NCBI RefSeq assembly: GCF_947568905.1
Contig: NC_079171.1
Span: 19,592,001-19,656,000, forward strand
Direction of reading: 5' to 3'
Origin: Ostrea edulis
Taxonomy: Eukaryota
Length of the DNA stretch: 64,000 nucleotides
Position 1 is the stretch's first letter. The number at the start of each line of letters is the position of its first letter. Below the pieces are notes generated by a model that was not told the DNA's origin, did not search any database, and saw nothing but the letters and a program-made list of their open reading frames with translations. Positions 14,979-57,117 of this stretch are shown here, in pieces. A program made the translations under genes and the position numbers.

Positions 14979-15090
14979 CTGCTGAAAAGGTCGATGTTGA
15001 GGAAAACATATTCTCCATTATCAAAATTCAGCTCATTTGCCTTTATCATGATGTCCCTCACGGAGTCTGCAGATGCACATAGCACCACAA
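14979..15090 (-). CDS. NPR1: NPR-like receptor shared exon 2
   Basis: Acceptor TTTTTTTCAG|TT GTG and donor AG|GTAAGT; 112 bp, phase 1 to phase 2. Encodes (I/V)VVLCASADSVRDIMIKANELNFDNGEYVFLNIDLFS, which resembles the vertebrate NPR xVYIC...NGDYVFFxLDxF segment. Confidence 0.92.
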
Positions 15091-15110
15091 CTGAAAAAAA
15101 ATACAAGAAT

Positions 15111-15232
15111 CCTTCAGTAAAGAGACAGAGATGTAAAGTGTCCCAAAATGTAACCCACAATCCCTCAGTAAAGAGACAAGAAGCTAGAGTGGCTCAAAAT
15201 ATAACCCACAATCCCTCAGTAAAGAGACAGGA
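15111..15232. repeat. 51-bp tandem duplication (~2.5 copies) next to the exon-2 acceptor
   Basis: CC(C/T)TCAGTAAAGAGACA recurs at 15111, 15162 and 15213. Confidence 0.8.
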
Positions 15233-16271
15233 AGGTATTTGTTAGTGTACAAAATGTCCCAAAACATAACGTGTCAAATGCAGGTGATTTGAGGTAAAAT
15301 ACTGACAACACCAAGATTGACAGATATCATTTTGTCGTCCATCTCTCTATGTGCCACAGTAAAGTTAACTTCTGTTTAAGTTCCATTATAAAATACATAA
15401 TCACATCGCTCACCAAAATTTGGTGTTTGGGTGGGGTTGTGAGTATAATTAGTACTGTGTTTAGTATTTCTTATTATTAACTTTAAAATAAAACAACAAT
15501 AAAGGAAATCTATAATAAAAAGTGATGAATCACAATTGAATAACAGCTGAAACAGATTCATCCTATTTCTCCAAATCCCGAATCGATCACTTTTGAAAGA
15601 AATCTTTAAAACCCGATCAATCATTGACAGCGAACTGTTTGTCTGCGAAGGGAAGTGATAAGTGTGATCGGAGTGTTTCAGGACAAAAACAACAACGTAC
15701 AAGAAGAGGCCGTTCGCTCATCTCCAGGGACGATATGACAAGGCTTGAAACATGTGGTTTCCATGCGAAACCGTTCACATTGATTAGTATTTTAAATCAC
15801 ACAAAAATATTGAATCTCTATGGAAATAAGTTTTTACAAAAAATCAGTATTTACAAAACCATGAAACACAAACACAATGAACACAAATTATCTCTCAAAC
15901 ATATTTGTTTGTTTAAAATCCGTCGAGAATTTTTAGCTCATAGTGAGGTACCACTTTAGACCTGAGGACCGTGGCAATGAAAGTCCTTCACTGTCACGAC
16001 AGAGCTGCGACTCTCGCATCTAGATACCGAGCGTCTGATGGAGGAACAATCACTACATATTTTTCCGTCATAGGAACGGGACTGAAACCTACGACCTCCA
16101 AGTCACTAATCATTGAACCAATAGGATATATGTAGATCCCACTCAATAGCGTAGAAACATAATGACACTGGTACTTGAATATGGATGGAATTATAGTGTC
16201 TTCTAATGTTAATATCGAGAGCACGTTAATACCGTAACGTTACAGTCAATATCCACATTCAGTGTTGGTAC

Positions 16272-16795: not shown

Positions 16796-16834
16796 TTAAA
16801 ATCGACAGTGTGCGTCACATCAGCTGTTATTAAC

Positions 16835-25618: not shown

Positions 25619-26306
25619 TACGGGTGTTTTTAGCCGCATCCTCAAGCAATGCTTGTAAGTTATAGGATCCCTTGACGCCTTCGTCAAACATCTTATACCA
25701 AGGTTCCGATACGTTACTTTTGAACTTGTGAAATATAGCTTCCATGGTAAAAAATTCCGTACTTTTACTTCTTTCTCGGTTAACGACATTATCATGGAAC
25801 AAGAGCCCGACGGTGGTCCAGTTAAAGGTTTGGGTAATTTCGAACACAACTTCTGCCACCTTTCCATACGTGGTTAACATACGGGTCAGTGACTTGTACT
25901 CGTTCTTTTTGTCGGAAAAGGCTTGGACAAAGGCACCGGCGGATATGACGGGGATGTTCCAATACGGTGCGAAGCGGGCAACGGGTGCCACGGCGAAATC
26001 GCAACAAGGACCCAGGTACACGTCGACCTCCTTAGCGACGTAAAGGTCAATTGCCCGTAAGGGACCCATCGTCTCGGAACACTCATCATCTTTATAGTTT
26101 ATCGTAATGTTGTGATTCGGCAGGAACTGGCCAGATTCCACTTTCTTAACAGCTATTTCTATAGCAGGAAGAACCTTATATTTCACAAACGGAAATTTCC
26201 CTTGTTCTGGAAGTAACACTGCCAATTTTACCGTATTATTCACACCTCTAGCAACGTTCAGCATATATATTCCCACCAAAATGAATAACCCACGTGCTAG
26301 TATCAT
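25619..26306 (-). CDS. NPR1: NPR-like receptor, alternative first coding exon B (proximal): signal peptide + N-terminal ~229 aa of ligand-binding domain
   Basis: ATG at 26306, signal peptide MILARGLFILVGIYMLNVARG, then KLAVLLP..TINYKDDECS..GPCC..PVARFAPYWNIPVISAGA..EYKSLTRM. Donor CGT A|GTAAGT at 25619/25618, phase 1. Confidence 0.92.
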
Positions 26307-26390
26307 ACTGTTCAGGACAACTTGCCGTTCTCAGTCTTCATAACATCACCTCTCCCCATCTGTCACTCGCACACTTCCACAGGGAAAAAG

Positions 26391-26397
26391 TTTTATA
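26391..26397 (-). promoter_or_regulatory. Candidate TATA box for exon B
   Basis: TATAAAA on the minus strand ~90 bp upstream of ATG 26306; would place a TSS near 26367. Motif only. Confidence 0.25.
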
Positions 26398-27717
26398 ACC
26401 ACGATTACAAGACTTCAATTCCTAAGTTTTAGTTTCCATTCACATTCAAACGGGGGAGAGAAAAAAATACACCAATATATGTAGATTTCAACACATGTCG
26501 GTGACCTTACTTAGATTTCCAAACCCCAGACTATTCTTAACAGCTGTTGAATAATGCAACAGTGGACCGTCACTGGAAAAAAACAACGTTGAGATGATTA
26601 TGACAGTAAGGTCTGTATGACGCTTGGTCAAAGCGTGGTGCGGAGAAACAGCACGCGCTACCATTGATTTCGGACGAGGACCCGCACAATTAGCGCCTGT
26701 CCACTCGGTGAGGAGAGATACACTGAATGGAGATGCGCATCCCCCGTACAATGAAAACTGTATAATCAGAAACTGTCTTTGTTATTCCTGTAACAAGCTC
26801 CACTAGTTTCCGTCAATGCTTGGGAGAGCGTCTAATCGCTGTGTTAAGCTATCAGCGGCAACAGCACAATGAGGTAGCACGAGCCCATTGTACAGTGCAG
26901 TATTATTTCATTTTATGGCATATTTCTGTTACAATCTTATAAACATCTGATTGTATACATGAATTCCTATCAATAAGGCACAATTCCAATAATTATTCTA
27001 TTTGCAACATTGGCTGTGATTTGTTGAGACTAAGGAAATGCGCTATACCCACCTGCTCAATTTATCAATACTGGTGTTTTTATTTGATGTATATTTAAGT
27101 GGATATCAATATTCAAATTACGTACTTTTATGTTATTTTTATTTTCCACATTTTCTTTTTAATCAAAAAAGTAATCTTAGTAATAATGCTCTTTAATGAT
27201 TTAGGGGTCTATCGCAAAGTGTACCTAATTGGTTTTGAATAACCAGATAGCTCATTTAAATTATATCGTTAAAATTGTGTTTAATATATTCCCGCACGAG
27301 CTGCATAAATATGTACATTTATATTAGAGATATTAACCACATGGAAGGTGTTTAAAAAATAGTAACAAAACACCACCCGTTGTACTACCGTAAATCAGCA
27401 AATTTAGAAATGAGGGTTCGATAGACGACTACAACGATAAAACAGAGGAATTGTGTCATAGTGCAGCCCCCAAATCAGCTGTGTGTACATGCCAGGAGTC
27501 TGTGTAGTAATGTGTCAAATTTTGTCATTATGTCATTATATCATTATTTTTCTAAATGCGCATCTGGTGCATCAAAATTGGTACCGTACAGGTTTGACAT
27601 CAGTTGTTTCATTGTTTCGGTACAGTTATAAATGATTGATGAAAACCACAATGACACATTCCATGATAACATTTTAAAAACTCGTGTTTTTATGAAATGT
27701 GTTATTCTGATTTTCAT

Positions 27718-27721
<4 letters not shown>

Positions 27722-27770
<49 letters not shown>
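27722..27770. repeat. (TA)n microsatellite
   Basis: Direct inspection. Confidence 0.97.
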
Positions 27771-27773
<3 letters not shown>

Positions 27774-27880
27774 CCTAGATGGTCGAGCGGTCTAGTGCGC
27801 TGGTTACATGCTGCTAGGGGAGTTGGTTCCGCGGGGCATGAGTTCAACCCCGGGTGGGGACGGAAGTGGGTATCCAAATA
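27771..27880 (+). mobile_element. tRNA-like SINE head (degenerate)
   Basis: TGGTCGAGCGGTCTAG (A-box-like) ... GAGTTCAACCCC (B-box-like), directly after (TA)n; no intact cloverleaf recognised. Confidence 0.45.
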
Positions 27881-28011
27881 AAAGTGAAATATTCTGTGCT
27901 TTCTTCACTTAGGGCAGTTATGTTCATTGCTATTTCCGTGCTCTCTCTCTCTCTCTCTCTCTCTCTATTAAAAAAAGCACTGAAAAGACCACGACTGTTG
28001 ATTATTTAACA

Positions 28012-28048
28012 CTCAAATTTTCGACGCAATCCGCGTCTTTATCAAGGG
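28012..28048 (-). ncRNA. Minimal type-I hammerhead-ribozyme-like motif (U3-A8 variant)
   Basis: Minus strand reads CCC-TTGATAA-A-GACGC-GGATT-GCGTC-GAAA-ATTT-GAG: core, perfect 5-bp stem II, GAAA, palindromic AAATTT stem III, and a 3-bp stem I with one mismatch. Confidence 0.5.
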
Positions 28049-29319
28049 ACATATATACATATATTATATATGGAATATATATATCTGACGAAATATATTG
28101 TTTTGTCCACTACCCAGAGATATTTTTTTCTTTTATTAATATTCACAGGTTACGTGTAATAAGTTAGTTACAGCAAAACCGATAACTTCAAAAACAGCGC
28201 GGAGGTAGAGCCCTCATCTATCTCCATCCGGCTTCCCTTGACTTTTTTGTACGGCTTTCTCTAATCCTGTTAATGTGCGGAATAAGATTTCGTGATCTCC
28301 AAATGAATTTTCCCTTGGTATCTAGTCTGTCGGAGGAAAACTTACGTGACAGTAGTCGACAATGGCGCCTGCAAGTGTCTTGTTAACCAAATCTTTGTGA
28401 GAATTCAAAAGAAAGGATTCTGATTGAATTTTACTGCCGCCGGAGTTTATCGAAATCCACATTTCCTAAAGCTGTGGAACGAGAAAAGCCTCACAATCAC
28501 ATTCTACTACTATAGAGAAACATACTGTAAATCGCTTAGCATTCGCATACTTTATTTCCGCAAAATAATGACATGGTAAATTTTCGCGAGACAATGCTAC
28601 TCTGAAATGCGATTAAAGTTCTCCTATTTCTTGTAATACTAGTAAGTGAGAACTAATCAGCACTTATCCCCTGGTTGGTTCTTGTAAAATCCATGAGTTG
28701 TTCAGTTTTAAATCTGCTGAGAACATGTCGACAGCTACTCTCTGAAGTTTTTGCACCAAAAAGTCGTTATCAGTAGCGCAACCGATTTCTGAAAGCTATA
28801 CAGTCCCGTCTGTTAAAGATAACTGATTTAAAGGACGCCGTTCCAGGAATTAAAAAGTCACAATTCAAGACTTGGTATAGGGATCAGTACTCCTGAAACA
28901 GAGGCAGGTAACCCTTATCTATTCTTGGAAAGTTTGCTTTGCAATGCCAATATCTAAAAAAAGGTATTTGCAAAATAATATCATACATTCATCTTAAAAC
29001 TTGCGTTTATTTTGAACTGAGTATTATATTTGAAGATCAAATGGTCAGCTTTATGGTTTTCATCTTGTTTACGTAATTACGCACAAACTCGGTATATACG
29101 TTAATATGAAAGCGATGTTTTTTAAAAATAATACATCAACTGTATACAAGTACATGTAACTGTATTATGCACGATAATTTTATTTTCGAGTTGAGAGAAT
29201 CTTGCGTGAACACGCACAAATAAAGTTTTTAAGAAAAGAACGTCATTTTAAAGTAACACTGAATTTACTTTTACATGAGTATAGTCTTTGTACTAGTACA
29301 CACTCCCTATTTCTTTAGT

Positions 29320-29670
29320 AATATGTCACGTGCTAGAATTCTCAACGCAAGGATTATACGTCACGTGGTAAAACTCTCAACGCAAGGATTCTACGTCACG
29401 TGTAAAAACTCTAAACACAAGGGTTCTATGACACGTGCGAGAACTCTCAACAAGAAGGTTCTACGTCACGTGAGAGAACTTTCAACACGAGGGTTCTATG
29501 TCACGTGGGAGAACTATTACCACGAGGGTTCTATGTCACGTGGGAGAACTCTCAATGCAAGGATTCTACGTCACATGCGAGAACTCTCAACAAAAGGGTT
29601 CTATGACACGTGCGAGAACTCTCAACAAGAAGGTTCTACGTCACGTGAGAGAACTCTTAACACAAGGGTT
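29320..29670. repeat. Degenerate ~35-bp minisatellite, ~10 copies
   Basis: GTCACGTGNGAGAACTCTCAACNCAAGG(A/G)TTCTA(C/T); explains ORF 29275-29733. Confidence 0.85.
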
Positions 29671-30417
29671 CTAAGTCTCAATCTTCTTGTCCGAGGTACA
29701 CCGGCGTATGATTCCCCAGTATATTTTACATGATCAAAATGGAAATGAAATCATTCTGCCGATTAATGTGTTGAAAGGAAACGGAGAGACTTCCTAGCTG
29801 TTCATATATGTGGCATTTAAGTAGATATTTCGGACTAATGGATGGACATGGGGGCCATTCTCTCACGTACGCTATAGAATAACAAAGGCCGGTAATTAGT
29901 GAAGATGTTCTGTGATGAACAACTGTGTAGTGTGCACGTCTCCGTCAGTTTATTGTGTTATGAATCATCAACTTTATCAATCTATCACACAAAATTTGGA
30001 GCAAGCTTAGGAATTAATTATACCCCCCCCCCCAATCGGAAACATTGCTCCCTGCATGAAACCAGCAGCCCCGTGGGAGTTGATGTTCACCTGATAATCA
30101 CACCCTGCAGAACGTAGTATAACGTGTCGACTGGGCTGGGTTCTTATCACAATCGGAGGTTGGTTATCTTGGAAATTTCAATTGTTTCCCCCTCACAAAA
30201 TTATGATGTGGATTTGTAACATTGCGGAAGGTGACCTTGACCAAATATAACTTGATTCAGAGTAGGGACAATGTTTAAGTGAACAAATTCAAAGTGATCA
30301 CCTGAACAAACACTTCCATTTAATTTACCAGTGACCCAGACTTTTGTCAAATGACATAAGCTCATGAATATTCATGACACGTTGTCTGGTTGTAAGTAAC
30401 GTCTATGTCCAAAACCA

Positions 30418-30520
30418 GATGTTCAGTAGTTGAGGGCACACTCAATACGTATGAACAAGATGTTCAGTAGTTGAGGGCACACTCAATACGTATGAACAAG
30501 ATGTTCAGTAGTTGAGGGTA
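30418..30520. repeat. 41-bp tandem repeat, ~2.5 copies
   Basis: GATGTTCAGTAGTTGAGGGCACACTCAATACGTATGAACAA. Confidence 0.85.
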
Positions 30521-30844
30521 CAATCATTACGTCTGTTCAGTATTTAAGAGTACAATTATTACGTATAAAGCAGTTGCTCAGTAGTTGGGGGTACAATTGT
30601 TAATTTGTATTGCATGAGCCATATAACCTAAAACATAAGATTCACCAGTTTTTTGGTTGAGTCCTCATAGCTTATCATGCACTTTGTTGAAGAATGTTTT
30701 AAATATAGTATACATTTTTCAATATTTCATTATTTGATCTTCCTCCCTGGGACTTGAACCTCTGGTCTACAGCTAGACATGAACGAATGTGTAACGAGTT
30801 TGTTTGCGTTAAGGAGTAAAGAAGACATTTAATGAACACAATAA

Positions 30845-31065
30845 TTCCTAAGAGGCGACTAAATTGGGCGGTCCTAAGAGGTGACTAAATGGGGCGGTCT
30901 TTCAGATGAAACCGCATTAAATCCGAAGTCCCGTGTCACAGTAGCTGTGGCACGATAAAGATCCCTCCCTGCTCAATGGCCTACATTTTACAGCCCTTCA
31001 CTGGCAGTGGTGACGTCTCCTTATGAGTGAAATATTCTCAAGAGGGACGTTAAACAATAAAATCA
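30845..31065 (+). mobile_element. SINE fragment
   Basis: GACTAAATGGGGCGGTC..GTCCCGTGTCACAG..GGCACGATAAAGATCCCTCCCTGCTCAA..GTGACGTCTCC..GGGACGTTAAACAATA. Confidence 0.72.

Positions 31066-37758: not shown

Positions 37759-37769
<11 letters not shown>

Positions 37770-37802
<33 letters not shown>
37770..37802. repeat. (GA)n microsatellite
   Basis: Direct inspection. Confidence 0.95.
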
Positions 37803-37806
<4 letters not shown>

Positions 37807-41717: not shown

Positions 41718-41856
41718 GAGAGTTCGTCAGATTTCTACGCTGTTAGAGAGTTCGTCAGATTTCTACGCTGTTAGAGATTTCGTCAGATTTCTACGCTGTT
41801 AGAATTTTTGTCAGATTCCTACGCTATTCGAGATTTCGTCAGATTTCTACGCTATT
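41718..41856. repeat. 28-bp tandem repeat, ~5 copies
   Basis: GAGA(G/T)TTCGTCAGATTTCTACGCTGTTA. Confidence 0.88.
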
Positions 41857-43679
41857 ATATTTTTGTTACTTTATCTTATAGAAACATTGATACATGTAGC
41901 GTATAACATAAGATATTGCGACCTGTATGTATAATAATGTACTTACGTTCCAATCTTAACACGTTCTACACGATCGAAATGCTCATTGCAATGACATAAC
42001 GGCTATTAACAAATTAGAAAATCACTGAAATGTAACAGAGATAATTGATTAAACAAGGGTAAAATTAATATCAATTGAGACACTTAATTAAGATATATAA
42101 TTGCTGCAGGCAAGGTCCATTAACAATTAGCACTGTGGTAAGGATCTGATAGCCATTTAAAGGGTTCGTTCCGTTCGATGGCATACGTCTTTGATAGAGA
42201 GTCTCCATTTTAATCTACACTGTATGAGATACGTGTACTAACCACGTGGTACAATCTAACTTTATAGTATTGGTAACTTCCTCTCGGTAGGGGTGTTTAT
42301 GTTGATGTAGGTTCCTAGTAATCACCACGGTGCATACAATGCAGCTACTTTTTCAATTAGTATGTCACAACATGGCCGATTTCTTAAACGTTTCATTCAT
42401 AGTTTTAAATATGTCCAATTTTATACACAGTCATCTTGCCACTGGACTCTTCATATCAAGTGACTATATTATGCGTATAGCGAGATCCGTTGACCAATTC
42501 GGAACCGACGGTACCCGTTTAGTTTTATAATAACAAAAAAGCCTACACCACATTGTTCTCAAGAATTTGATCACATAACAAAGTAGTGAAATGCCGAGCG
42601 ACATGTAAATGAAAGACTTAAGAAATAAATGACATTGAAGTGTACGACTTCTTCGTTGGAGCAGAAGTCAATTGAAAGCCCATAGGTGATGCTCCTTAGA
42701 CACAACAAAGAAGGCTGTTATTGTAAACACGCTCCAGAGGCAGTTCAAAAGGGCTTCATATGATTGATCCCGGGAAAAAACGGAAATTAGTTTACCAAAA
42801 TGAAGTTTGGGACAAGACATCAACGTTAAGCCGTGTATAGAAAGCGTATACACCTGATTACATTACCAATCTTACAGATATCTACGTACATTTCTCACTG
42901 CCCTGTGAACCGTGTAATTTAACATTGCTGCAATGTTTTCTTGTCTGGTTGTTAACCTTACGGACGGCGACAACCAACAAACTCGATCTTTATACAATTA
43001 CATGAAACACACGATTGGCGTGTTCAAAGTCAACCTTAAGAAGCTGTTGGCCTTACACTTTCTCAGATCCCAAATGTTTATAAAGGTATAGCTTTTAAAT
43101 AAAACTAGCACCGATAGAAATATACGAGAAAAACATACAATATATTTGCATGCGGTATGATGGTGTTGTTACAGGTTTTGTCGATATTATCAAAATCTAA
43201 AAATGGGGAGTTACATGTATATACAGTACTATTTTCACAGATTATTTTCATGAAACCTGATCCGTTGAAGTTCAGCAACTTCAAACAATTATTAGACTGG
43301 AAACGTCAAACTTAAGCAGGAAAGCCACTAGTATCCTGTGGTCTATGCACCACTCAACCAATTACTATCTAATTTACATCAAAATACGTTCGTCGTTTGG
43401 TTACTCATGTAGCTTATAACTGATATTATATTGTAACTTAATATACGACTATTTGAATCATGTAAATTCATCACATGAATGATCATGGATTTTATTTTCT
43501 ATAAAATTTTCAAATCAACTTATTATCACTGTTTCTTTGTCTTCGTGTGTTCTATTTCATGCAAATTATTTCGTTACTGTTTCATGTTTATCTTCCATAA
43601 AGGTCTCCAAAATTGGAAATGTGCGATTGATATGTGCAGAAGAAGGTTCTTTTAATTCACATACATGTATACGTATCAA

Positions 43680-44240
43680 GCCTACAGTAATATGGGGTCT
43701 CGGTTTATATGATCTCACGCGCTACAGAAATATGGGGCCTCGGTTTATATGATCTCACACCCTACAGAAATATGGGGCCTCGGTTTATATGATCTCACAC
43801 CCTACAGTAATATGGGGCCTCGGTTTATATGATCTCACGCGCTACAGAAATATGGGACCTCGGTTTATATGATCTCACGCGCTACAGAAATATGGGACCT
43901 CGGTTTATATGATCTCACGCGCTACAGTAATATGGGGCCTCGGTTTATATGATCTCACACCCTACAGAAATATGGGGCCTCGGTTTATATGATTTCACAC
44001 CCTACAGTAATATGGGGCCTCGGTTTATATGATCTCACACCCTACAGTAATATGGGGCCTCGGTTTATATGATCTCACGCGCTACAGTAATATGGGGCCT
44101 CGGTTTATATGATCTCACACCCTACAGTAATATGGGGCCTCGGTTTATATGATCTCACACCCTATAGTAATATGGGGCCTCAGTTTATATGATCTCACGC
44201 GCTACAGTAATATGGGGCCTCGGTTTATATGATCTCACAC
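43680..44240. repeat. 40-bp minisatellite, ~14 copies
   Basis: (C/G)CTACAG(T/A)AATATGGGGCCTCGGTTTATATGATCTCAC(A/G)C. Confidence 0.96.
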
Positions 44241-47200
44241 GTGGGTGCAGTGGGTTCCCTTTCCTCACTTATACAGAATATTGATCACCGCAAAATTGTC
44301 CTTGTGTTCACCTTCAGACCATAGGGCGTGACTTAGGTACTAGTAAGTGATGAGAAGCTAGATAGGGAAGATTGCTTGTATCTTAAAAAGTATCTTTAAT
44401 CTTAAGCGCAGCCAAACAGACAAAAATATAACAATTGAAGGCATTTAAACAAGACGGATACTCTGTGACCCATAAAGCAAGGAGAGGTAATTCCGAATAG
44501 ACAAAGAATGCAAAAAACACAGGTAGCTATGGATTTAGTATACCTGCATATTATGTTATTGAAGCAATATGTGTTCATTACTCACAAAGCTACATCTGTT
44601 GGTAATCGATTTTACACGTGTTAGTTTCATATCAAGAGTGAGTTACCACAGCTCGCACCCTGTCAGAAATGTACAATAAACGTAACACAGTCGTAAATAT
44701 CAAGTTTCACTATTGTAAGATGTCAGACAAATTTCATCATCGGCCCAAAACTAGTCCATTAATGAATGTATTTCTAACAAATGTTTTCATTGTTCACAAC
44801 ATTATCTGTTTTTGTACATTTTATTTACAGTATGTTCCACATACATAAATATTAGTATCTAAAACATCAGAACTACGGACCATATCGCTCACCAGTGCAG
44901 TAATATTTCCCGCATGTTCATAAAGCATAAAATTCTGATTCTGAATGAAAATGCATACAGAAAAAAAAATTAATTTACACTGCATGGGAATACATAGATG
45001 AGATTTTTATGTGTTATATAGTTATGCATCTTGAAAAGATTTAAAAAGACGTGCGGCCTCGACCAGACTACAGGGGTTGTGCTACGGATAAATCTGAACC
45101 CACACTACATGGAGATCTGGTATGTTACTCGGACAGATTATACATGTTTGATTTTCCTCTGCATTTGAACCCCTTTTGATATCCAGGAAAACAAACCTGA
45201 ATCTTATTTGACAAATTTTATCGTTGTTATTAAAATCATTTATAATAAATTGTCCGATATATTCATATGGGAAGATTTAAACCTATATCAATAACTTAGC
45301 TCCGTGGTCAGTGTAAAACAAATTATGTTTTCAACACCACGCCCTAATTCCATTATTTCCAAACGATCCCATTGGAATGAATCATAATTGAATCCCCTTA
45401 ACCACAACGTGCTTTGTGACAAGTTGAGAGAGAAAGAAACCAACAGACAACAAACATTTTATAAAAATGACTTAATATCGGCTATTTAAACACCCATCTA
45501 CGACTCGTCAGAATTTACGACAAAATGTGGACATGCAATTTCGATTATTGTTATTCAGAAACAGGGTCGACAAGGGAACATGAATCGGAATCAACATTAG
45601 AATGAAATTGGATGCGTTTTCTAAGAATTATTACGAAAACAACACATCGGTGACAGGCATATTCAAAGTTCTCGGTTTCCTTGGAAATGTAAATAATATG
45701 AATATAAAATGGTACTGAAAGGATGAATTGCTGATAACTAAATGTCAAATGAATAATTCTCCTGAAGACGGATAACTGTATCATACGTGTTCGAAGAACA
45801 AATAAAACAAACAGTCTGAGACTTTAAAACCGCACAATACAATGTCATTTTGGAGTTCTCGTTACTGCACAATACAATGCCATTTTGGAGTTCTCGTTAC
45901 TCGTAATGTGACGTCAGATTGGAGGGTTTGTCCGTTGTTGGGTGTTTTTCCTTATATATATATTTGTGTGATTTTGAATGGGGGAGCTAAATCGTCATAT
46001 CTTTGAAAATTAATTCAAATGTAGATTTTACATCATCTTAGGGAAATTAATTCATGTATCGTCGGATCATCAGTATTTGTCTATATGAATTAAAACACAC
46101 ATGAGAAAATTGTACATAGACTCTTCACACATTTGTTAGAAACGTTGCTTCCGGCAATCACTTTCGAGATTAAAATTAGGCCCAAACAATATACGTTCCT
46201 TCCATCTTGACACAGAACTTCGGTACTACTGAATTATTGAATGAAAGTATACCATGTGACTAATGGTTGTGAATAAAAAAATTTAATTATCTTGTAGATT
46301 TTGATGTTAAAACAAGTTACTGTGTAAAACAAACTAATAAAATATGTATCACTAGATCTGCATTTAGTCCTAACCTTTTAATTATGTAATAGCTTTACTT
46401 TACCATGAAATGAACGATCCAGCACCCGGATACTTGTCACAGAAATACAACTTTAAATTCAGTATCCTATCTATTTTCACGAATTCTTATTTAGAAACAA
46501 AACAAATGTCATTAATTTTAATAGGAATGGTTGAAAGGGCCGCTATATTATCTTTAAAACCAATAGCGTATAATACATGCAAAGTCTCGATTATCAAACC
46601 GCTAACTATCAACAAACAGTTTCATCCAATCTACCACGCCACGCCGATCAGCAATCGATCCTATCTCTGTCCTCCATAGCATGCTCGGGCAAGCGACCGC
46701 TGGGCTATAGTAACATGATACTTTATTGGCAAAATTTGGTAGATATTTTTCTATAATTCAGATAAAATGAGGGTGAATCTGATATAACTGTACAGAATAC
46801 GCCATAACAATATAACAACTATAACAATAACTACAGCAACTAGGCTTAGACGATATTGGTCTAGTTTAGATTCCATTCGTTTAATCTAGATTATAATCCT
46901 TGTCCAAGTGCTATATTATTGGTTTAGCGGAGGTGTTACTGGTCATTAGATGACATCGGTCTAGTTTTGACATTAAGGGTATAGTTTTAATGTTGTTGAT
47001 CTAATTTAAATGTTATTGGTCAATTTATATGTTATTGGTCTAACTTAAGACATTTTTGATTGGTTTAAATGTTATTGGTCTAGATTGTAATGTTATTGGA
47101 ATAGCTTAGACAGTATGTTACATACATGCATGAAAGGGTGGACACGTGAGACACCTTGGCGTCTCGTTAAAGATAAAATTGTAATCAATGAAAATTAGAT

Positions 47201-47324
47201 AAAACATGCGCATTTGTGTTTTAATTATGTAGTAATCAAAATCTGGAAATAAATTATTTGGCGGAAACTTGCCACTTCAATGTAAAATTATCAAGAGAGA
47301 AATCATGACCCTTGTACAACTCGA

Positions 47325-47725
47325 ACTCATGATCTGTAGAATGACAGAGCACTGAAATCATGATCTGTAGAATGACAGAACACTGTACTCATGATCTGTA
47401 GAATGACAGAACGCTGTACTCATGATCTGTAGAATGACAGAACACTGTACTCATGATCTGTAGAATGACAGAACGCTGTACTCATGATCTGTAGAATGAC
47501 AGAACACTGTACTCATGATCGGTAGAATTACAGAACACTGTACTCATTATCTGTAGAATGACAGAACACTGTACTCATGATCTGTAGAATGACAGAACAC
47601 TGTACTCATGATCTGTAGAATGACAGAACACTGAACTCATGATCTGTAGAATGACAGAACACTGAACCCATGATCTGTAGAATGACAGAACACTGTACTC
47701 ATGATCTGTAGAATGACAGAACACA
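47325..47725. repeat. 31-bp minisatellite, ~13 copies
   Basis: TCATGATCTGTAGAATGACAGAACACTGTAC. Confidence 0.95.
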
Positions 47726-47744
47726 GAACACTAAGCAGACAATG

Positions 47745-47890
47745 TTGATTGATTGTACTCGTATATTGTTTAACGTCCCGCTCGAGAATATTTCACTCAT
47801 ATGGAGACGTCACCAATGTCAGTGAAGGGCTGCAAAATGTAGGCCTATGTTCGGCGCTTACGGCCTTTGAACAGGGAGTTATCTTTATCT
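47745..47890 (-). mobile_element. SINE 3' fragment
   Basis: TGATTGATTG tail, TATTGTTTAACGTCCCGCTCGAGAATATTTCACTCATATGGAGACGTCACC..GGCCTTTGAACAGGGA. Confidence 0.7.
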
Positions 47891-48604
47891 TAGCAGTTTA
47901 TTTATATGTGTGATATTTTCTGCATTTAATTTTGATATTTTGAGACGGCAATGCAAGAATATAGCGATATAAAGTCTCAATCGTGTGCAGATTTTTCCGC
48001 GCCGTAAATCGAGGGTTTTAATGAGGCGTGGATCTGTAGCTCTCTGATCTGTCACGTTATTTTCTCAGAGAGCTACTGATCTGCAGCCAGTAGAGGTGTA
48101 TATATAACTGGGAATTGTTTTCATGAAAAACAAATGTCTCCCCAGCTCCCCAAAAAGGAAGTGCTCAAATGAAACCTCCTCCCCTGAATGTACTGCATGG
48201 TATAGACATTATGAACTCCGATAAGCCACAGGAGAAGTGTTCACAAACTATTCAAAACCCTCCATCTATCAGATCTACTATAAATTTAAGGATAACAATT
48301 GGATCCTCTTGTACCTACAATATTCACATCTGCAAATACCATTAAAAATGCATACAATTTCAAGTCACATAGGAGGAGAAACGTTTAGAAGCTAATTTAA
48401 CATCCTCCACCCTTCTTAGATCCACTATATCTTTTATGATAACAACTGGATCATCCTGTCCCTACAATATGCACATCTACAAATTGTTGTTGTTTTTTTT
48501 AAATGCCATTGAAGAGCCGTGGAGCGAAAGCGCTTTGGAATAAATGTGAAATCTTCATCTGAATTTTTTCTCTATATTTACCTATAGACCAAGGACTTAT
48601 TTTA

Positions 48605-48610
<6 letters not shown>

Positions 48611-48664
<54 letters not shown>
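48611..48664. repeat. (TA)n microsatellite
   Basis: Direct inspection. Confidence 0.97.
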
Positions 48665-48665
<1 letters not shown>

Positions 48666-49377
48666 CATATTTGAACGTACATAATTATATACCCTAAAAT
48701 CTAATGACCTTGAATCAGGGTCAGAGCAGACAACTTCTGCGTCAAGTTGTCTCCCCATTGTAAGTACTGAAACAGTGGGGCTGACAGGACTGACTCAAGG
48801 CGGTTTTCCTATCATTTGTTTAGAAGTATTACCGTGAACATTTATCGTGTAAATTAAGTGTCAATATGGTTTTTTTGAAGTTCAAACAGTACTTGAGAAA
48901 CTATATTAATTTTAGAAAAGTGAGATACTAAAGCCCGGACGCCATTCAACTTAATATATTTACATTCCCAATGTATCATTACCAATGACAGCCATTTCCT
49001 CATGAATTTGATTCAGCTGTGAACAATCCGCGAATGAATCTAATTCCGATACAAAAGAATGAAGCATGTAAATATAAATTCCCCTTTTTGAAAATACATA
49101 AAGGTATGAACTGCAACACTAACGCGATTCACGCAGTATGCTGGCTTCTAGCGTCGCAGTTCATACCTTACGTATTTAAAAAAAAAAAAACAACCCACAT
49201 TTATTTCTCATGGAAACCGAGTACGACTTCAACATATCACAGACATTTGTAAGTGCACTTAATGAAAGGCAGCTGCTCTTACTTCTAATACCAAATTATG
49301 AAGATACTACTTTTGGTGGAAATAATCAATGTTTGATCTTTATCATTGTCTTGGGAATACAGTCACAAGATACACTG

Positions 49378-49715
49378 GTCGCAGTAGCTCAGTGGTACAG
49401 CGTTTGCCTCGTAACCGGGAGAGGGGGGGGGGGCGTGAGTTTGAGTCCTCAAACTTAAGACGTTAAAATAGGGAGTGATTGCTACTTCGCTAAACGCTCG
49501 GTATTTAGAGGTGAGAATGACGGGTCTTTCGGATATGACCTTAAAAATGGAGGTCCCGTGTCACAGTAAGCGTTTACATGATAAAAGACCCTCACTGCTA
49601 CGGCCCTGAGCGATAAGCATACGTCTAAAGTTGTGGTACTTCACCTACAGCTGGTGACGTCTCAATATGAACGAGAAATTCTCGACGGGACGTATATATA
49701 AAATACATACAGCAA
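49378..49715 (+). mobile_element. Near full-length tRNA-derived SINE
   Basis: A-box-like TAGCTCAGTGGT, B-box-like GAGTTTGAGTCC, central GTCCCGTGTCACAGTA..ATAAAAGACCCTCACTGCTAC, and 3' GGTGACGTCTC..GGGACGT shared with other copies in the window. Confidence 0.75.
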
Positions 49716-49739
49716 GAGACATCTTCAGTGCTCTCAAAT

Positions 49740-52700
49740 CCCGAAACAACCAATCCCGAAGTGTGATACGGATCCAAATGAAACAACCAATCCCCAAGTG
49801 TGATACGGATCCAAATGAAACAACCAATCCCCAAGTGTGATACAGATCCAAATGAAACAACCAATCCCCAAGTGTGATACGGATCCAAATGAAACAACCA
49901 ATCCCCAAGTGTGATACAGATCCAAATGAAACAACCAATCCCCAAGTGTGATACAGATCCAAATGACACAACCAATCCCCAAGTGTGATACAGATCCAAA
50001 TGAAACAACCAATCCCCAAGTGTGATACAGATTCAAATGAAACAACCAATCCCCAAGTGTGATACAGATCCAAATGAAACAACCAATCCCCAAGTGTGAT
50101 ACAGATCCAAATGAAACAACCAATCCCCAAGTGTGATACAGATCCAAATGAAACAACCAATCCCCAAGTGTGATACGGATCCAAATGAAACAACCAATCC
50201 CCAAGTGTGATACAGATCCAAGTGAAACAACCAATCCCCAAGTGTGATACAGATCCAAATGAAATAACCAATCCCCGAGTGTGATACAGATCCAAATGAA
50301 ACAACCAATACCCGAGTGTGATACAGATCCAAATGAAACAACCAATCCCCAAGTGTAATACGGATCCAAATGAAACAACCAATCCCCAAGTGTGATACAG
50401 ATCCAAATGAAACAACCAATCCCCAAGTGTGATACAGATCCAAATGAAACAACAAATCCCCAAGTGTGATACAGATCCAAATGAAACAACCAATCCCCAA
50501 GTGTGATATGAACGTACCCACGGATCCAAATGACACAACCAATCCCCGAAGTGTGATACGGATCCAAATGAAACAACCAATCCCCAAGTGCGATACAGAT
50601 TCAAATGAAACAACCAATCCCCAAGTGTGATACAGATCCAAATGAAACAACCAATCCCCAAGTGTGATACAGATTCAAATGATACAACCAATCCCCAAGT
50701 GTGATACAGATACAAATGAAACAACCAATCCCCAAGTGTGATACAGATCCAAATGAAACAACCAATCCCCAAGTGTGATACAGATTCAAATGAAACAACC
50801 AATCCCCAAGTGTGATACAGATCCAAATGAAACAACCAATCCCCAAGTGTGATACAGATCCAAATGAAACAACCAATCCCCAAGTGTGATACAGATCCAA
50901 ATGAAACAACCAATCCCCAAGTGTGATACAGATCCAAATGAAACAACCAATCCCCAAGTGTGATACGGATCCAAATGAAACAACCAATCCCCAAGTGTGA
51001 TACAGATCCAAGTGAAACAACCAATCCCCAAGTGTGATACAGATCCAAATGAAACAACCAATCCCCGAGTGTGATACAGATCCAAATGAAACAACCAATC
51101 CCCAAGTGTGATACAGATCCAAATGAAACAACCAATCCCCAAGTGTGATACAGATCCAAATGAAACAACCAATCCCCAAGTGTGATACAGATCCAAATGA
51201 AACAACCAATCCCCAAGTGTGATATGAACGTACCCACGGATCCAAATGACACAACCAATCCCCGAAGTGTGATACGGATCCAAATGAAACAACCAATCCC
51301 CAAGTGCGATACAGATTCAAATGAAACAACCAATCCCCAAGTGTGATACAGATCCAAATGAAACAACCAATCCCCAAGTGTGATACAGATTCAAATGATA
51401 CAACCAATCCCCAAGTGTGATACAGATACAAATGAAACAACCAATCCCCAAGTGTGATACAGATCCAAATGAAACAACCAATCCCCAAGTGTGATACAGA
51501 TTCAAATGAAACAACCAATCCCCAAGTGTGATACAGATCCAAATGAAACAACCAATCCCCAAGTGTGATACAGATCCAAATGAAACAACCAATCCCCAAG
51601 TGTGATACAGATCCAAATGAAACAACCAATCCCCAAGTGTGATACAGATCCAAATGAAACAACCAATCCCCAAGTGTGATACGGATCCAAATGAAACAAC
51701 CAATCCCCAAGTGTGATACAGATCCAAGTGAAACAACCAATCCCCAAGTGTGATACAGATCCAAATGAAACAACCAATCCCCGAGTGTGATATGAACGTA
51801 CCCACGGATCCAAATGACACAACCAATCCCCGAAGTGTGATACGGATCCAAATGAAACAACCAATCCCCAAGTGCGATACAGATTCAAATGAAACAACCA
51901 ATCCCCAAGTGTGATACAGATCCAAATGAAACAACCAATCCCCAAGTGTGATACAGATTCAAATGATACAACCAATCCCCAAGTGTGATACAGATACAAA
52001 TGAAACAACCAATCCCCAAGTGTGATACAGATCCAAATGAAACAACCAATCCCCAAGTGTGATACAGATTCAAATGAAACAACCAATCCCCAAGTGTGAT
52101 ACAGATCCAAATGAAACAACCAATCCCCAAGTGTGATACAGATCCAAATGAAACAACCAATCCCCAAGTGTGATACAGATCCAAATGAAACAACCAATCC
52201 CCAAGTGTGATACAGATCCAAATGAAACAACCAATCCCCAAGTGTGATACAGATCCAAATGAAACAACCAATCCCCAAGTGTGATACGGATCCAAATGAA
52301 ACAACCAATCCCCAAGTGTGATACAGATCCAAGTGAAACAACCAATCCCCAAGTGTGATACAGATCCAAATGAAAAAACCAATCCCCGAGTGTGATACAG
52401 ATCCAAATGAAACAACCAATCCCCGAGTGTGATACAGATCCAAATGAAACAACCAATCCCCAAGTGTGATACAGATCCAAATGAAACAACCAATCCCCAA
52501 GTGTGATACAGATCCAAATGAAACAACCAATCCCCAAGTGTGATATAAACGTACCCACGGATCCAAATGACACAACCAATCCCCGAAGTGTGATACGGAT
52601 CCAAATGAAACAACCAATCCCCAAGTGCGATACAGATTCAAATGAAACAACCAATCCCCAAGTGTGATACGGATCCAAATGAAACAACCAATCCCCAAGT

Positions 52701-54730
52701 GTGATACAGATCCAAGTGAAACAACCAATCCCCAAGTGTGATACAGATCCAAATGAAACAACCAATCTCCGAGTGTGATACAGATCCAAATGAAACAACC
52801 AATCCCCAAGTGTGATACAGATCCAAATGAAACAACCAATCCCCAAGTGTGATACAGATCCAAATGAAACAACCAATCCCCAAGTGTGATACAGATCCAA
52901 ATGAAACAACCAATCCCCAAGTGTGATATGAACGTACCCACGGATCCAAATGACACAACCAATCCCCGAAGTGTGATACGGATCCAAATGAAACAACCAA
53001 TCCCCAAGTGCGATACAGATTCAAATGAAACAACCAATCCCCAAGTGTGATACAGATCCAAATGAAACAACCAATCCCCAAGTGTGATACAGATTCAAAT
53101 GATACAACCAATCCCCAAGTGTGATACAGATACAAATGAAACAACCAATCCCCAAGTGTGATACAGATCCAAATGAAACAACCAATCCCCAAGTGTGATA
53201 CAGATTCAAATGAAACAACCAATCCCCAAGTGTGATACAGATCCAAATGAAACAACCAATCCCCAAGTGTGATACAGATCCAAATGAAACAACCAATCCC
53301 CAAGTGTGATACAGATCCAAATGAAACAACCAATCCCCAAGTGTGATACAGATCCAAATGAAACAACCAATCCCCAAGTGTGATACGGATCCAAATGAAA
53401 CAACCAATCCCCAAGTGTGATACAGATCCAAGTGAAACAACCAATCCCCAAGTGTGATACAGATTCAAATGAAACAACCAATCCCCGAGTGTGATATGAA
53501 CGTACCCACGGATCCAAATGACACAACCAATCCCCGAAGTGTGATACGGATCCAAATGAAACAACCAATCCCCAAGTGCGATACAGATTCAAATGAAACA
53601 ACCAATCCCCAAGTGTGATACAGATCCAAATGAAACAACCAATCCCCAAGTGTGATACAGATTCAAATGATACAACCAATCCCCAAGTGTGATACAGATA
53701 CAAATGAAACAACCAATCCCCAAGTGTGATACAGATCCAAATGAAACAACCAATCCCCAAGTGTGATACAGATTCAAATGAAACAACCAATCCCCAAGTG
53801 TGATACAGATCCAAATGAAACAACCAATCCCCAAGTGTGATACAGATCCAAATGAAACAACCAATCCCCAAGTGTGATACAGATCCAAATGAAACAACCA
53901 ATCCCCAAGTGTGATACAGATCCAAATGAAACAACCAATCCCCAAGTGTGATACAGATCCAAATGAAACAACCAATCCCCAAGTGTGATACGGATCCAAA
54001 TGAAACAACCAATCCCCAAGTGTGATACAGATCCAAGTGAAACAACCAATCCCCAAGTGTGATACAGATCCAAATGAAACAACCAATCCCCGAGTGTGAT
54101 ACAGATCCAAATGAAACAACCAATCCCCGAGTGTGATACAGATCCAAATGAAACAACCAATCCCCAAGTGTGATACAGATCCAAATGAAACAACCAATCC
54201 CCAAGTGTGATACAGATCCAAATGAAACAACCAATCCCCAAGTGTGATATGAACGTACCCACGGATCCAAATGACACAACCAATCCCCGAAGTGTGATAC
54301 GGATCCAAATGAAACAACCAATCCCCAAGTGCGATACAGATTCAAATGAAACAACCAATCCCCAAGTGTGATACGGATCCAAATGAAACAACCAATCCCC
54401 AAGTGTGATACAGATTCAAATGATACAACCAATCCCCAAGTGTGATACAGATACAAATGAAACAACCAATCCCCAAGTGTGATACAGATCCAAATGAAAC
54501 AACCAATCCCCAAGTGTGATACAGATTCAAATGAAACAACCAATCCCCAAGTGTGATACAGATCCAAATGAAACAACCAATCCCCAAGTGTGATACAGAT
54601 CCAAATGAAACAACCAATCCCCAAGTGTGATACAGATCCAAATGAAACAACCAATCCCCAAGTGTGATACAGATCCAAATGAAACAACCAATCCCCAAGT
54701 GTGATATGAACGTACCCACGGATCCAAACG
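49740..54730. repeat. 37-bp satellite array (~5 kb) with higher-order structure
   Basis: GATCCAAATGAAACAACCAATCCCCAAGTGTGATACA, with a recurrent insertion variant TA(T)GAACGTACCCACGG. Confidence 0.98.
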
Positions 54731-56408
54731 AAACAACAAATATATACAACCATGAAGTGGGTTTTTTTTCCATCGACAAAAGTTTGACTTCATTATGATA
54801 CATGATTCTGCGGCGTTTTATTCTTCACCTCAATGGCGACAGCCACTGATGCAGATGATCATTTTAAGACCTCCCTTTCGCAATTATTACTTGTAAAATA
54901 TAAAATGTAGTGGAAAAAATCTCCACCAACATAATATTCTAATTACGTAGGGATAGTTTTCGTTGGTAAACGTATCTAATCAATTCATCATAGTGCTACA
55001 ACGAAAATATATTGACTTCATGTTTCTTATGCTGTCTGAGGAACGAAGTACGTGTGATATCAAAGCGAATAAGACTAAATAAAGCGATTTATTTCTTTAC
55101 CCAGATTCCCTTCCTCTGAACAAACAAAACATGCAAAATTTATCTTTAATTACTAAAATTAAAACACGGACAAAGGTCACGCTCATTGGTATTGGAGAAA
55201 ATGCTTTTAGTATTAATTTTTTTTTAAAAATTAATATGGGAATACTGCCACGCACACAATGTTACATGCAAAAGTAAAATGGTAGTAATTGACTCTTTTC
55301 AGCTATACCCAAGATAGGCAATTGTAAATATCACACTCTGAGTAATGCGTTGTAGACAGATTGACAGCAATCAGCAATATGCTCTCTTCACAACAAAGGG
55401 AAGCGTAGAATCAGAAAATGGATTGCATAATAAAAGTTTTTGTTTGTTTTAAACATACGGATATCATTCTTTTGTGTTGTTAAATGAACATACAGACTTC
55501 TTAATAACGGACACGGGGGTTAGATTTCTATAACGATAGAACATCATGCACAATATCCACGTTTTGTAAAACATCGTGGAAGTCCGAGATGAGTAACTGC
55601 AAACCGAACGGCTTGGAACCACTTCATTTCTTGGTTCATTAATCCTGCGTGTATCGATGGGCCATTAGGGTGACTTCATGAAAACATCATGTAAGCATTC
55701 AGTAAAAAAAACCAAAAACCTGTAGACACAGCTTTGAGTCAGAGTACGTCAAAATTAGATCTTCGTTTGCAAAATACAGAATACAGTTTAAATACATGGA
55801 ATTTTAAATGTCCATCATTTTTCTCGATTTTAATACATGTATATGATTTTACTGAGATTATGCGGCCAAAAAATGAAGTAGTATTACGTCTTCAGATTTA
55901 AAACTGCGACTAATTTTAAACCCCTTGCTTAAAACTCGCAAGCAATCATTTTTCAAAACTAATTACCGTATCGTATAACTATCCACGAAAGCGTCTACAG
56001 CAAACTGCTTACACTAACGCACAATGTACTCTCTCTTTCTCCATCTCTCAAAATCACAGAAGACATACGAGAAAACAGAAACCACTCTCTAATTATCCAA
56101 TATTCCAAATGTTTCATTTATTGCATATTGAACTATTAGCAACGACATGATCGTGACATTTATAAAAATTCCTAATAATATTTATTGTACAATCCATGTT
56201 TATTATTTATAATTCTGGACATGAAAACAATTTTCTGGTGCTGTCAAATCACGGCACAATAACCTATAAATGTGGCTATTAATTAGACTATAATAATGGA
56301 ACAATCACGTGCTTATACAGTTATCCAGAATGACTTCGGCCGAGGAGGAAATTAAAATTTCTGTCTGCAAACTGCCCCCAAAATATAATAGTGAAGTGTC
56401 TGTCTTAC

Positions 56409-57117
56409 CTCGACATCTGACACTGCCCTCCCTGAGTATGGAGCCCAGGTTGAACTGGTCCATGTAATTGACATCTATCTGGGACGACCACTGGTGGGTG
56501 GACTTGTCTAGTTTGTCATACACAGGCTTACAGAGAAAAAACGTCTCAGCATCCCCCACATTCGTGTTGACTTTGTTATTGTGATAAATAATTCCGATTT
56601 GTTTCCAAGAAAAGTTAGACAGGATGGAATGGACAGCGTCTGCCGTGTTGGAATAGGACCCACTCATCCGGGTCAGTAGTTTGTATTCATCTTTATCCTT
56701 GAAGCCGTCTGCCCGGGCACCGGGCGTAATAACCGGGATTTGCCAGTAAGGAGAATAACGGGCCACGGGGGAGGTAGCATAGGTGCACATTGGACCAAAA
56801 AACACGTGGGACTCCTTCTTATAATACATTTCCATCGCCAACAGGGGTGCTTGGGTGCCCGAACATTTTGAATCCTTATAGTTAATTGTGAAGTTAACAT
56901 CCCTCACTAATCCCTCCAGCCGGACCTTCTCCAGTCCTATCTGTATTGCCGTCAGGGCCCGGGATTTCTCCGGAATGTCTTCCTTGTCGCTGACTGCGGG
57001 GATCAGAACACCCAGCTTAATCTCCAACGGGTCTGTACTGCCCTCTACAAGAGACGGGCAGGCTACCAAGGTAGTGAATGCCAGTACCAAATAGGACATT
57101 AGTATATCCATGTTCAT
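56409..57117 (-). CDS. NPR1: NPR-like receptor, alternative first coding exon A (distal): signal peptide + N-terminal ~236 aa of ANF-receptor ligand-binding domain
   Basis: ORF 56305-57153 encodes KLGVL..TINYKDSKCS..GPMC..PVARYSPYWQIPVITPGA..EYKLLTRM, the ANF-receptor family pattern. The track start at 57153 is TTG; the first ATG is 57117 (alternatives 57111, 57099), followed by a hydrophobic signal peptide. Donor CGA G|GTAAGA at 56409/56408, phase 1. The symbol is family-level (NPR1/NPR2-like). Confidence 0.88.

What the first reader, a model, noticed from the sequence alone, without database searches (positions are those of the whole stretch)
14979..57117. Receptor guanylyl-cyclase-like gene with two interchangeable first exons, each encoding a different N-terminal ligand-binding module
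Seen in the sequence: two paralogous ~700-bp coding exons 30 kb apart (A 56409-57117, B 25619-26306), each with its own ATG and signal peptide, about one-third identical by hand count. Both stop one base after the homologous Arg codon at a GTAAG donor (phase 1). The single exon 2 starts with TT, so A gives ...VRCR-V-VVLCAS and B gives ...KNTR-I-VVLCAS, both in frame. By eye I found no second copy of exons 2-8 between 26.3 and 56.4 kb. Established: in NPR-family receptors this N-terminal part of the ectodomain contributes to dimerisation and hormone binding, and the variable-first-exon/constant-region layout is how UGT1A and clustered protocadherins diversify. Inference: one locus makes two receptors with different peptide specificity or expression on a shared TM/kinase-homology/cyclase core, possibly heterodimerising. 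I do not know this layout for NPR genes; further variable exons could lie beyond the right edge.
Basis: partly seen in the sequence, partly recalled or inferred. Interest (0 to 1): 0.88.

Follow-up and report, generated by a model that had tools for sequence, protein, structure and literature searches.

The report
Receptor cyclase gene, interchangeable first exons
An oyster hormone-receptor-type guanylyl cyclase gene has at least two alternative first exons, each coding a different front half of the ligand-binding domain and joined to one shared body. The layout is real and conserved, and NCBI's RefSeq gene predictions already list it as isoforms, but I found no paper describing it.

Summary

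- **The two exons.** Exon A (56409-57117) and exon B (25619-26306), both on the minus strand, are paralogous N-terminal halves of an ANF_receptor domain (37% identical, E 1e-50). Each has its own ATG and a phase-1 GTAAG donor.
- **One constant set.** The window holds a single set of constant exons 2-8. tblastn with 274 homologues and a profile scan found no second set between B and A.
- **Match to RefSeq.** My spliced model A+exons 2-8 is 530/530 identical to RefSeq XP_048750951.1, [quoted passage not shown]. That protein continues into kinase-homology and cyclase domains.
- **Transcript evidence in a relative.** In a related oyster, an RNA-derived contig joins the A-type exon to exon 2 at the same boundary. 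Its 236-nt 5'UTR is collinear with genomic DNA, which suggests the exon has its own transcription start.
- **Other oysters.** Magallana gigas isoforms X2, X5, X8 and X9 share an identical 852-aa constant region but have different N-terminal modules.
- **Selection.** Both exons are under purifying selection (dN/dS 0.11 for A, 0.05 for B).
- **Still inferred.** Different ligand specificity, different expression and heterodimerisation are not tested.
- **Novelty.** The layout is annotated in RefSeq and has a precedent in C. elegans gcy-28 promoters. I found no paper describing it.

The parts
56409..57117 (-). Variable first exon A, coding part: ATG, signal-peptide-like start, N-terminal half of the ANF_receptor domain, phase-1 donor G|GTAAGA
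   Evidence: 530/530 identity of A+constant model to RefSeq O. edulis isoform X3. Orthologues 63-83% identical with intact ORF and conserved donor. dN/dS 0.115 against L009.
25619..26306 (-). Variable first exon B, coding part: own ATG, signal-peptide-like start, paralogous N-terminal half of the ANF_receptor domain, phase-1 donor A|GTAAGT
   Evidence: Orthologous B-type modules are spliced to the constant region in Pinctada (P0179), Mytilus (P0262) and Dreissena X3 (P0295). dN/dS 0.049 against L013.
14979..15090 (-). Constant exon 2, the shared acceptor for A and B (starts TT, completing the split codon)
   Evidence: cDNA L011 943-1054 aligns exactly to 15090-14979.
12316..12505 (-). Constant exon 3
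11876..12011 (-). Constant exon 4
11434..11525 (-). Constant exon 5
10920..11058 (-). Constant exon 6 (end of the ectodomain, CGFDGAKCPPE)
10244..10328 (-). Constant exon 7, transmembrane helix (GIVIIVLGTLLVIVLVAAFFIY)
778..904 (-). Constant exon 8, juxtamembrane. The kinase-homology and cyclase exons lie beyond the left edge of the window.
   Evidence: P0306 Pfam domains.
26307..56408 (-). 30-kb stretch between B and A. It is intron for A-initiated transcripts and holds no second copy of exons 2-8 and no other recognisable gene. It contains many tandem repeats, including a 5-kb 37-bp satellite at 49743-54706.
58068..58198 (-). Conserved non-coding block about 1 kb upstream of exon A, collinear in four oyster loci. 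Candidate exon-A-specific regulatory element.
   Evidence: long invariant runs although dS for the exon is above 2 against L010 and L012
61793..61996 (-). Conserved non-coding block about 4.8 kb upstream of exon A. Further collinear blocks lie at 59887-60101 and 61378-61621.

Best explanation
The window carries the 5' part of one very long receptor guanylyl cyclase gene of the natriuretic-peptide-receptor type. It is probably Ostrea edulis 'atrial natriuretic peptide receptor 1-like'. The gene is built like UGT1A: several paralogous first exons lie in tandem upstream of a single set of constant exons. Each first exon carries its own start codon, signal peptide and the N-terminal ~205 mature residues of the ligand-binding ectodomain. 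This corresponds to about residues 1-208 of NPR-A and ends just before the conserved (V/I)VVLC strand. A transcript starts at one of these exons and its phase-1 donor is spliced to the common exon 2. The resulting receptors share the C-terminal half of the ectodomain, the transmembrane helix, the kinase-homology domain and the cyclase, but differ in the front half of the binding domain. Two such exons (A and B) are in the window, and oyster RefSeq isoforms imply more lie upstream of the right edge. Shown: the exons, the frames, the single constant set, the A-to-exon-2 product in RefSeq for this species and in RNA of a related oyster, and purifying selection on both exons. Inferred: each exon has its own promoter, and the isoforms differ in ligand specificity, dimer interface and site of expression.
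For: A and B are paralogous ANF_receptor N-halves. The window has only one set of constant exons and only two first-exon modules. Both spliced models are open. Model A equals the first 530 aa of RefSeq XP_048750951.1, isoform X3 of Ostrea edulis, which carries ANF_receptor, kinase-like and Guanylate_cyc domains. The RNA-derived contig L011 (4659 nt, 1088-aa ORF) reads ...HNCR|IVVLCAS. Its bases 1-942 are collinear with genomic contig L012 at 98.6% and stop exactly at the donor, and bases 943-1054 match window exon 2. M. gigas X2, X5, X8 and X9 and C. angulata X3, X5 and X8 have identical 852-aa constant regions and N-modules only 28-41% identical to one another, and X2 is the A-type orthologue. 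The A-type modules form a clade with 100% support, and B groups with Pinctada and Mytilus. dN/dS is 0.115 for A and 0.049 for B at dS about 0.83. The C. virginica gene spans 157 kb with a separately called 230-aa ANF_receptor ORF inside it. The junction aligns to ...RKGR|VIYIC of NPR-A ectodomain structures.
Against: I could inspect no RNA read from this species. RefSeq isoform X3 is a Gnomon model whose evidence I could not see. I recovered no O. edulis protein with the B-type N-terminus, so B usage rests on orthologous models in other bivalves, its position next to exon 2 and its conservation. Transcription starts are not mapped. The 236-nt collinear 5'UTR comes from another species and covers A only. 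The upstream regions of A and B share no promoter motif, so a protocadherin-like shared choice mechanism has no support. Functional differences between the isoforms are untested.
Confidence: 0.88

Rival explanations
1. A and B are mutually exclusive internal coding exons transcribed from one shared upstream promoter beyond the right edge, rather than true first exons with their own promoters.
For: No transcription start data exist for this species. Oyster genes of this family extend 150-200 kb with more distal first exons, so upstream transcription does pass over A and B.
Against: Each exon has its own ATG and signal-peptide-like start. In the related oyster the cDNA's 236-nt 5'UTR is collinear with the genome directly upstream of the A-type exon, with no splice. 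Four conserved collinear non-coding blocks lie within 5 kb upstream of A. The family member gcy-28 in C. elegans uses separate promoters for its isoforms.
Confidence: 0.08
2. Exon A is an orphan duplicate of exon 1 that is no longer used, and the RefSeq isoform is a prediction artefact.
For: A lies 41 kb from exon 2. I could not inspect the evidence behind the RefSeq model.
Against: dN/dS is 0.115 at dS 0.82. The ORF is intact and the donor conserved in seven or more species clusters. Two independent RNA contigs (P0305, P0320) in a related oyster carry the A-type exon spliced to the constant region. M. gigas X2 is the same arrangement.
Confidence: 0.03
3. Exon A starts a separate tandem paralogue with its own downstream exons that were missed.
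For: Tandem duplication is common in this family. The oyster kinome paper counts 23 receptor guanylyl cyclases in C. gigas.
Against: tblastn with 274 homologues (E<=1) and a profile of the constant region find nothing between 26.3 and 56.4 kb. The constant exons are 85-98% conserved across oyster genera, so even a diverged copy should be detected.
Confidence: 0.01

Closest known systems
UGT1A locus (vertebrates): tandem variable first exons, each with its own promoter, spliced to shared exons 2-5
   Same: Paralogous first exons each encode the substrate- or ligand-recognising N-terminal half of the protein. There is one shared constant set and one donor per variable exon. The upstream regions of the variable exons are distinct, with no shared motif between A and B.
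   Different: The protein family differs: a receptor guanylyl cyclase rather than a glucuronosyltransferase. Here the exon boundary cuts through a single bilobed periplasmic-binding-protein-type domain. Promoter use is not shown here.
Clustered protocadherins (Pcdh alpha and gamma): variable first exons joined to constant exons
   Same: The variable exon encodes the signal peptide and extracellular recognition part of a membrane receptor, and the constant exons encode the intracellular part.
   Different: A Pcdh variable exon encodes the whole ectodomain plus the transmembrane helix, and choice is stochastic through a conserved promoter element and CTCF. No shared element was found here, and only half of the ectodomain is variable.
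C. elegans gcy-28 isoforms (gcy-28.c and gcy-28.d)
   Same: It belongs to the same receptor cyclase subfamily; some hits are named gcy-28-like. The isoforms have separate promoters with different expression (c broad, d in AIA and a few other neurons), different start codons and a common 3' end (PMC9249223; PMC8816384).
   Different: I could not retrieve the worm sequences, so I have not tested whether the alternative worm exons encode the homologous ~230-aa half-domain with the same phase-1 junction.
Vertebrate NPR1, NPR2 and NPR3
   Same: Same domain architecture. The ectodomain matches NPR-A and NPR-C structures at E 1e-70.
   Different: Vertebrates obtain receptor diversity from separate genes. 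Here one gene supplies several ligand-binding front halves.

Membership tests
Natriuretic-peptide-receptor-type membrane guanylyl cyclase | Extracellular ANF_receptor (type I periplasmic-binding-protein fold) domain | tested here: met
   PF01094 scores E 1e-23 for each first exon alone and E 8.5e-60 over residues 54-407 of P0306. phmmer to NPR-A and NPR-C ectodomain structures gives E about 1e-70.
Natriuretic-peptide-receptor-type membrane guanylyl cyclase | Single transmembrane helix after the ectodomain | tested here: met
   Exon 7 encodes GIVIIVLGTLLVIVLVAAFFIY followed by basic residues. This was read directly from the translation; no TM predictor was run.
Natriuretic-peptide-receptor-type membrane guanylyl cyclase | Intracellular kinase-homology domain and class III cyclase domain | tested here: met
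   These lie outside the window. P0306, whose first 530 aa equal the window model, has PK_Tyr_Ser-Thr at 559-806 and Guanylate_cyc at 876-1060.
Natriuretic-peptide-receptor-type membrane guanylyl cyclase | Activated by a natriuretic-type peptide ligand | not testable with these tools
   The ligand is unknown.
Variable-first-exon / constant-exon gene (UGT1A and Pcdh type) | Two or more paralogous 5' exons, each with its own start codon, upstream of one constant set | tested here: met
Variable-first-exon / constant-exon gene (UGT1A and Pcdh type) | Each variable exon is spliced directly to the same first constant exon | tested here: met
   For A: RefSeq isoform X3 is identical to the model, and an RNA contig in a related oyster shows the junction. 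For B: the frame is compatible and orthologous models exist in Pinctada, Mytilus and Dreissena. No reads from this species were inspected.
Variable-first-exon / constant-exon gene (UGT1A and Pcdh type) | Each variable exon has its own promoter or transcription start | tested here: inconclusive
   The 236-nt 5'UTR of the relative's cDNA is collinear with the genome upstream of the A-type exon, and conserved blocks lie upstream of A. No transcription start data exist for this species or for B.
Variable-first-exon / constant-exon gene (UGT1A and Pcdh type) | Shared conserved promoter element in front of every variable exon (Pcdh-specific) | tested here: not met
   5 kb upstream of A and of B share nothing beyond chance 13-17-mers.

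The most novel reading that the evidence does not exclude
The tandem array of interchangeable half-ectodomain first exons may not be an oyster peculiarity. It could be an old, widespread way for NPR/gcy-28-type receptor cyclases to diversify ligand recognition. On this reading, five or more modules per gene are maintained for hundreds of millions of years in molluscs, and equivalent arrays exist in brachiopods, chelicerates, nematodes and amphioxus. Because the variable half carries the dimer interface, isoforms would form isoform-specific dimers, each tuned to a different peptide and cell type. Hints: gene models in Lingula, Limulus, Bulinus and Branchiostoma string two or three such modules in series. 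Patella and C. virginica genes span 157-212 kb. gcy-28 has isoform-specific promoters.
Probability: 0.3. Interest if true: 0.7.

Novelty: new member of a known kind. Interest (0 to 1): 0.45.

Why it matters
Vertebrates use separate genes (NPR1, NPR2, NPR3) to recognise different peptides. Here one gene swaps the front half of the binding domain while keeping the signalling body. This gives a compact, promoter-addressable set of receptors. It also offers a natural domain-swap experiment for asking which half of the NPR ectodomain sets ligand specificity and dimerisation. For mollusc neuroendocrinology it means that counts of receptor cyclase genes understate receptor diversity, and that expression studies must be exon-specific. 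The layout is visible in RefSeq isoform lists. My full-text searches found no description of it, so it is an easy, well-supported thing to report, though not a new kind of mechanism.

Tried and rejected
- **Second copy of exons 2-8 between B and A.** tblastn with 150 and then 274 homologues, plus an HMM of the constant region against all six-frame ORFs, found nothing above noise.
- **Further first-exon modules in the window, including the second class ending ...(E/K)(I/V)G..(Y/F)(G/S).** The module HMM finds only A and B.
- **Other genes between exon 2 and the right edge.** ORFs of 110 aa or more are satellite artefacts or have no Pfam hit.
- **Genomic loci of relatives, to count first exons at the DNA level.** The C. 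virginica and Patella genes are too long to be served (157 and 212 kb). M. gigas X2 and C. angulata X3 are not on record. The Aplysia and Plakobranchus loci split the module into 2-4 exons and were uninformative.
- **Shared promoter motif upstream of A and B.** None found.
- **Rfam scan of the region upstream of A.** Only sub-threshold hits inside tandem repeats.
- **Literature.** Eight full-text searches found no paper on alternative first exons in mollusc receptor cyclases. The Tsunozaki 2008 gcy-28 paper is not held.
- **Structure prediction.** Not run. The sequence match to solved NPR ectodomains already places the junction.
Full report
**What is in the sequence**

The gene runs on the minus strand. 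Exon A (56409-57117) opens with ATG and a hydrophobic signal-like stretch. It ends ...AGA TGT CGA G|GTAAGA. Exon B (25619-26306) does the same and ends ...ACC CGT A|GTAAGT. Exon 2 follows a long pyrimidine tract and CAG at 15090 and begins TT GTG GTG CTA TGT.

The two exons are 37% identical over 207 residues (E 1e-50). Each covers positions 2 to about 133 of the 353-position Pfam ANF_receptor model (E 1e-23). The window has no N runs.

**The constant part**

Stop-to-stop ORFs, tblastn and a cDNA of a related oyster define seven constant exons:

| Exon | Coordinates | Note |
|---|---|---|
| 2 | 14979-15090 | shared acceptor |
| 3 | 12316-12505 | |
| 4 | 11876-12011 | |
| 5 | 11434-11525 | |
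| 6 | 10920-11058 | end of ectodomain |
| 7 | 10244-10328 | transmembrane helix |
| 8 | 778-904 | juxtamembrane |

All have AG/GT boundaries and consistent phases. Joining A or B to these exons gives open reading frames of 530 and 523 residues.

**Does exon A have its own downstream exons?**

No. tblastn with 274 homologous proteins at E<=1 gave strong hits only at A, at B and at the single constant set. A profile of the constant region and a profile of first-exon modules were run with all filters off against every six-frame ORF of 15 aa or more. They found the same exons, and nothing else scored better than E 0.5. The constant exons are 85-98% identical between oyster genera, so a diverged copy would have been seen. 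The 30 kb between B and A holds tandem repeats, including a 5-kb 37-bp satellite, and no ORF with a Pfam match.

**Is exon A used, and what is it spliced to?**

- A search of 1.84 billion representative proteins and a word-indexed search found A-type orthologues at 63-83% identity. All were single-exon ORFs reading a few codons into the intron after a conserved ...CR|G/A-GTAAG donor.
- The 90% cluster of the window's own A ORF contains RefSeq XP_048750951.1, [quoted passage not shown], 1089 aa. Its first 530 residues are identical to my model exon A + exons 2-8, with no mismatch. It continues into kinase-homology and guanylate cyclase domains.

Independent transcript evidence comes from a related oyster. 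Logan contig L011 (4659 nt, run SRR14492765) encodes a 1088-aa receptor whose A-type module is 71% identical to window A and is followed by ...HNCR|IVVLCAS. Bases 1-942 of this contig are collinear at 98.6% with a genomic contig of the same or a sister species (L012). The match stops exactly at the donor, and bases 943-1054 align to window exon 2 end to end. The 236-nt 5'UTR is thus unspliced genomic sequence directly upstream of the A-type exon. This favours a separate transcription start for that exon. A second contig with the same product exists (P0320).

**The layout in other species**

- M. gigas RefSeq isoforms X2, X5, X8 and X9, and C. angulata X3, X5 and X8, share an identical 852-aa constant region beginning (V/I)VVLCASADSVREIM. 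Their N-terminal modules are only 28-41% identical to one another. X2 carries the A-type orthologue.
- B-type modules are joined to the same constant start in Pinctada, Mytilus and Dreissena models.
- In a tree of modules, the A-type sequences form a clade with 100% support. B groups with Pinctada and Mytilus. A second class of modules forms other branches.
- The C. virginica gene spans 157 kb and contains a separately called 230-aa ANF_receptor ORF. The Patella gene spans 212 kb.
- Gene models in Lingula, Limulus, Bulinus and Branchiostoma string two or three such modules in series, which hints at tandem arrays there too. I did not test those loci.

**Selection**

Against the orthologous exons of a sister species (JGI contigs L009 and L013), dN/dS is 0.115 for A (dS 0.82) and 0.049 for B (dS 0.84). 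Neither exon is a decaying duplicate.

**Where the junction falls in the protein**

Aligned to solved NPR-A ectodomains, the junction corresponds to ...RKGR|VIYIC. This is about mature residue 208, just before the strand carrying Cys213, using the published rat NPR-A numbering as I recall it. The variable exon therefore supplies the first segment of the membrane-distal lobe and much of the first segment of the proximal lobe. It is not an independent domain. From the published NPR-A structures, again from memory, the chloride site, the head-to-head dimer contacts and most hormone-contacting residues lie in this N-terminal part. That is the basis for inferring different ligand specificity and isoform-specific dimerisation. 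Neither was tested here.

**Regulation**

Four non-coding blocks lie within 5 kb upstream of exon A: 58068-58198, 59887-60101, 61378-61621 and 61793-61996. They are collinear and 68-79% identical in Crassostrea-type loci whose synonymous sites are saturated, and they contain long invariant runs. They are candidate A-specific regulatory elements. The upstream regions of A and B share no motif, so the arrangement resembles UGT1A more than the protocadherin clusters.

**Comparison with what is known**

The mechanism is a known kind: variable first exons joined to a constant set. Within this receptor subfamily, C. elegans gcy-28.c and gcy-28.d have separate promoters with different expression, different start codons and a common 3' end (PMC9249223; PMC8816384). 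I could not check whether the worm exons are homologous modules. Eight full-text searches found no paper describing this layout in molluscs. The oyster kinome paper counts 23 receptor cyclases and does not mention it.

**Verdict**

It is a real, conserved variable-first-exon receptor gene. It is already present in RefSeq isoform annotation and, as far as I could search, undescribed in the literature. The mechanism is ordinary and its application is moderately interesting.

Noticed in passing
window 1-256 (minus strand; acceptor AG at 258-257): The P2RX7_C-like Cys-rich ORF (PF20478, E 1e-12) has a pyrimidine tract and CAG acceptor. It starts in phase 0 and is in frame with exon 8 (...SNLSLTR|TTNGEACAEGRVLIE). 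GenBank models in Pinctada imbricata and Mactra antiquata splice exactly this way. It is probably an alternative 3'-terminal exon giving an ectodomain-TM receptor with a P2X7-ballast-like tail and no cyclase, conserved across three bivalve orders.
   Followed up: partly
window 58068-58198, 59887-60101, 61378-61621, 61793-61996: Four collinear conserved non-coding blocks lie upstream of exon A. They are shared with Crassostrea-type loci L010 and L012 (68-79% identity, long invariant runs) even though synonymous sites are saturated. They have no Rfam match.
   Followed up: partly
window 49743-54706: A 5-kb satellite of about 132 copies of a 37-bp unit (93% matches) sits inside the A-to-exon-2 intron. 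It has strong strand skew and produces long spurious ORFs in all three frames.
   Followed up: no
window 57114-57131 (minus strand): A five-codon upstream ORF (ATG GCA ACT CTA ATA TGA) overlaps the exon A start codon by four bases (ATGA). I did not check whether it is conserved in orthologues.
   Followed up: no
P0003 (Branchiostoma lanceolatum), P0322 (Limulus polyphemus), P0006 (Lingula anatina), P0004 (Bulinus truncatus): Annotated proteins contain two or three first-exon-type half-ANF modules in series. In Limulus these are followed by the constant region. They probably reflect gene models reading through tandem alternative first exons, which hints that the layout is widespread in bilaterians.
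   Followed up: partly
window 3945-4756 (minus strand): ORFs of 106-172 aa with a transposon-like look lie in intron 7. They have no Pfam match.
   Followed up: no
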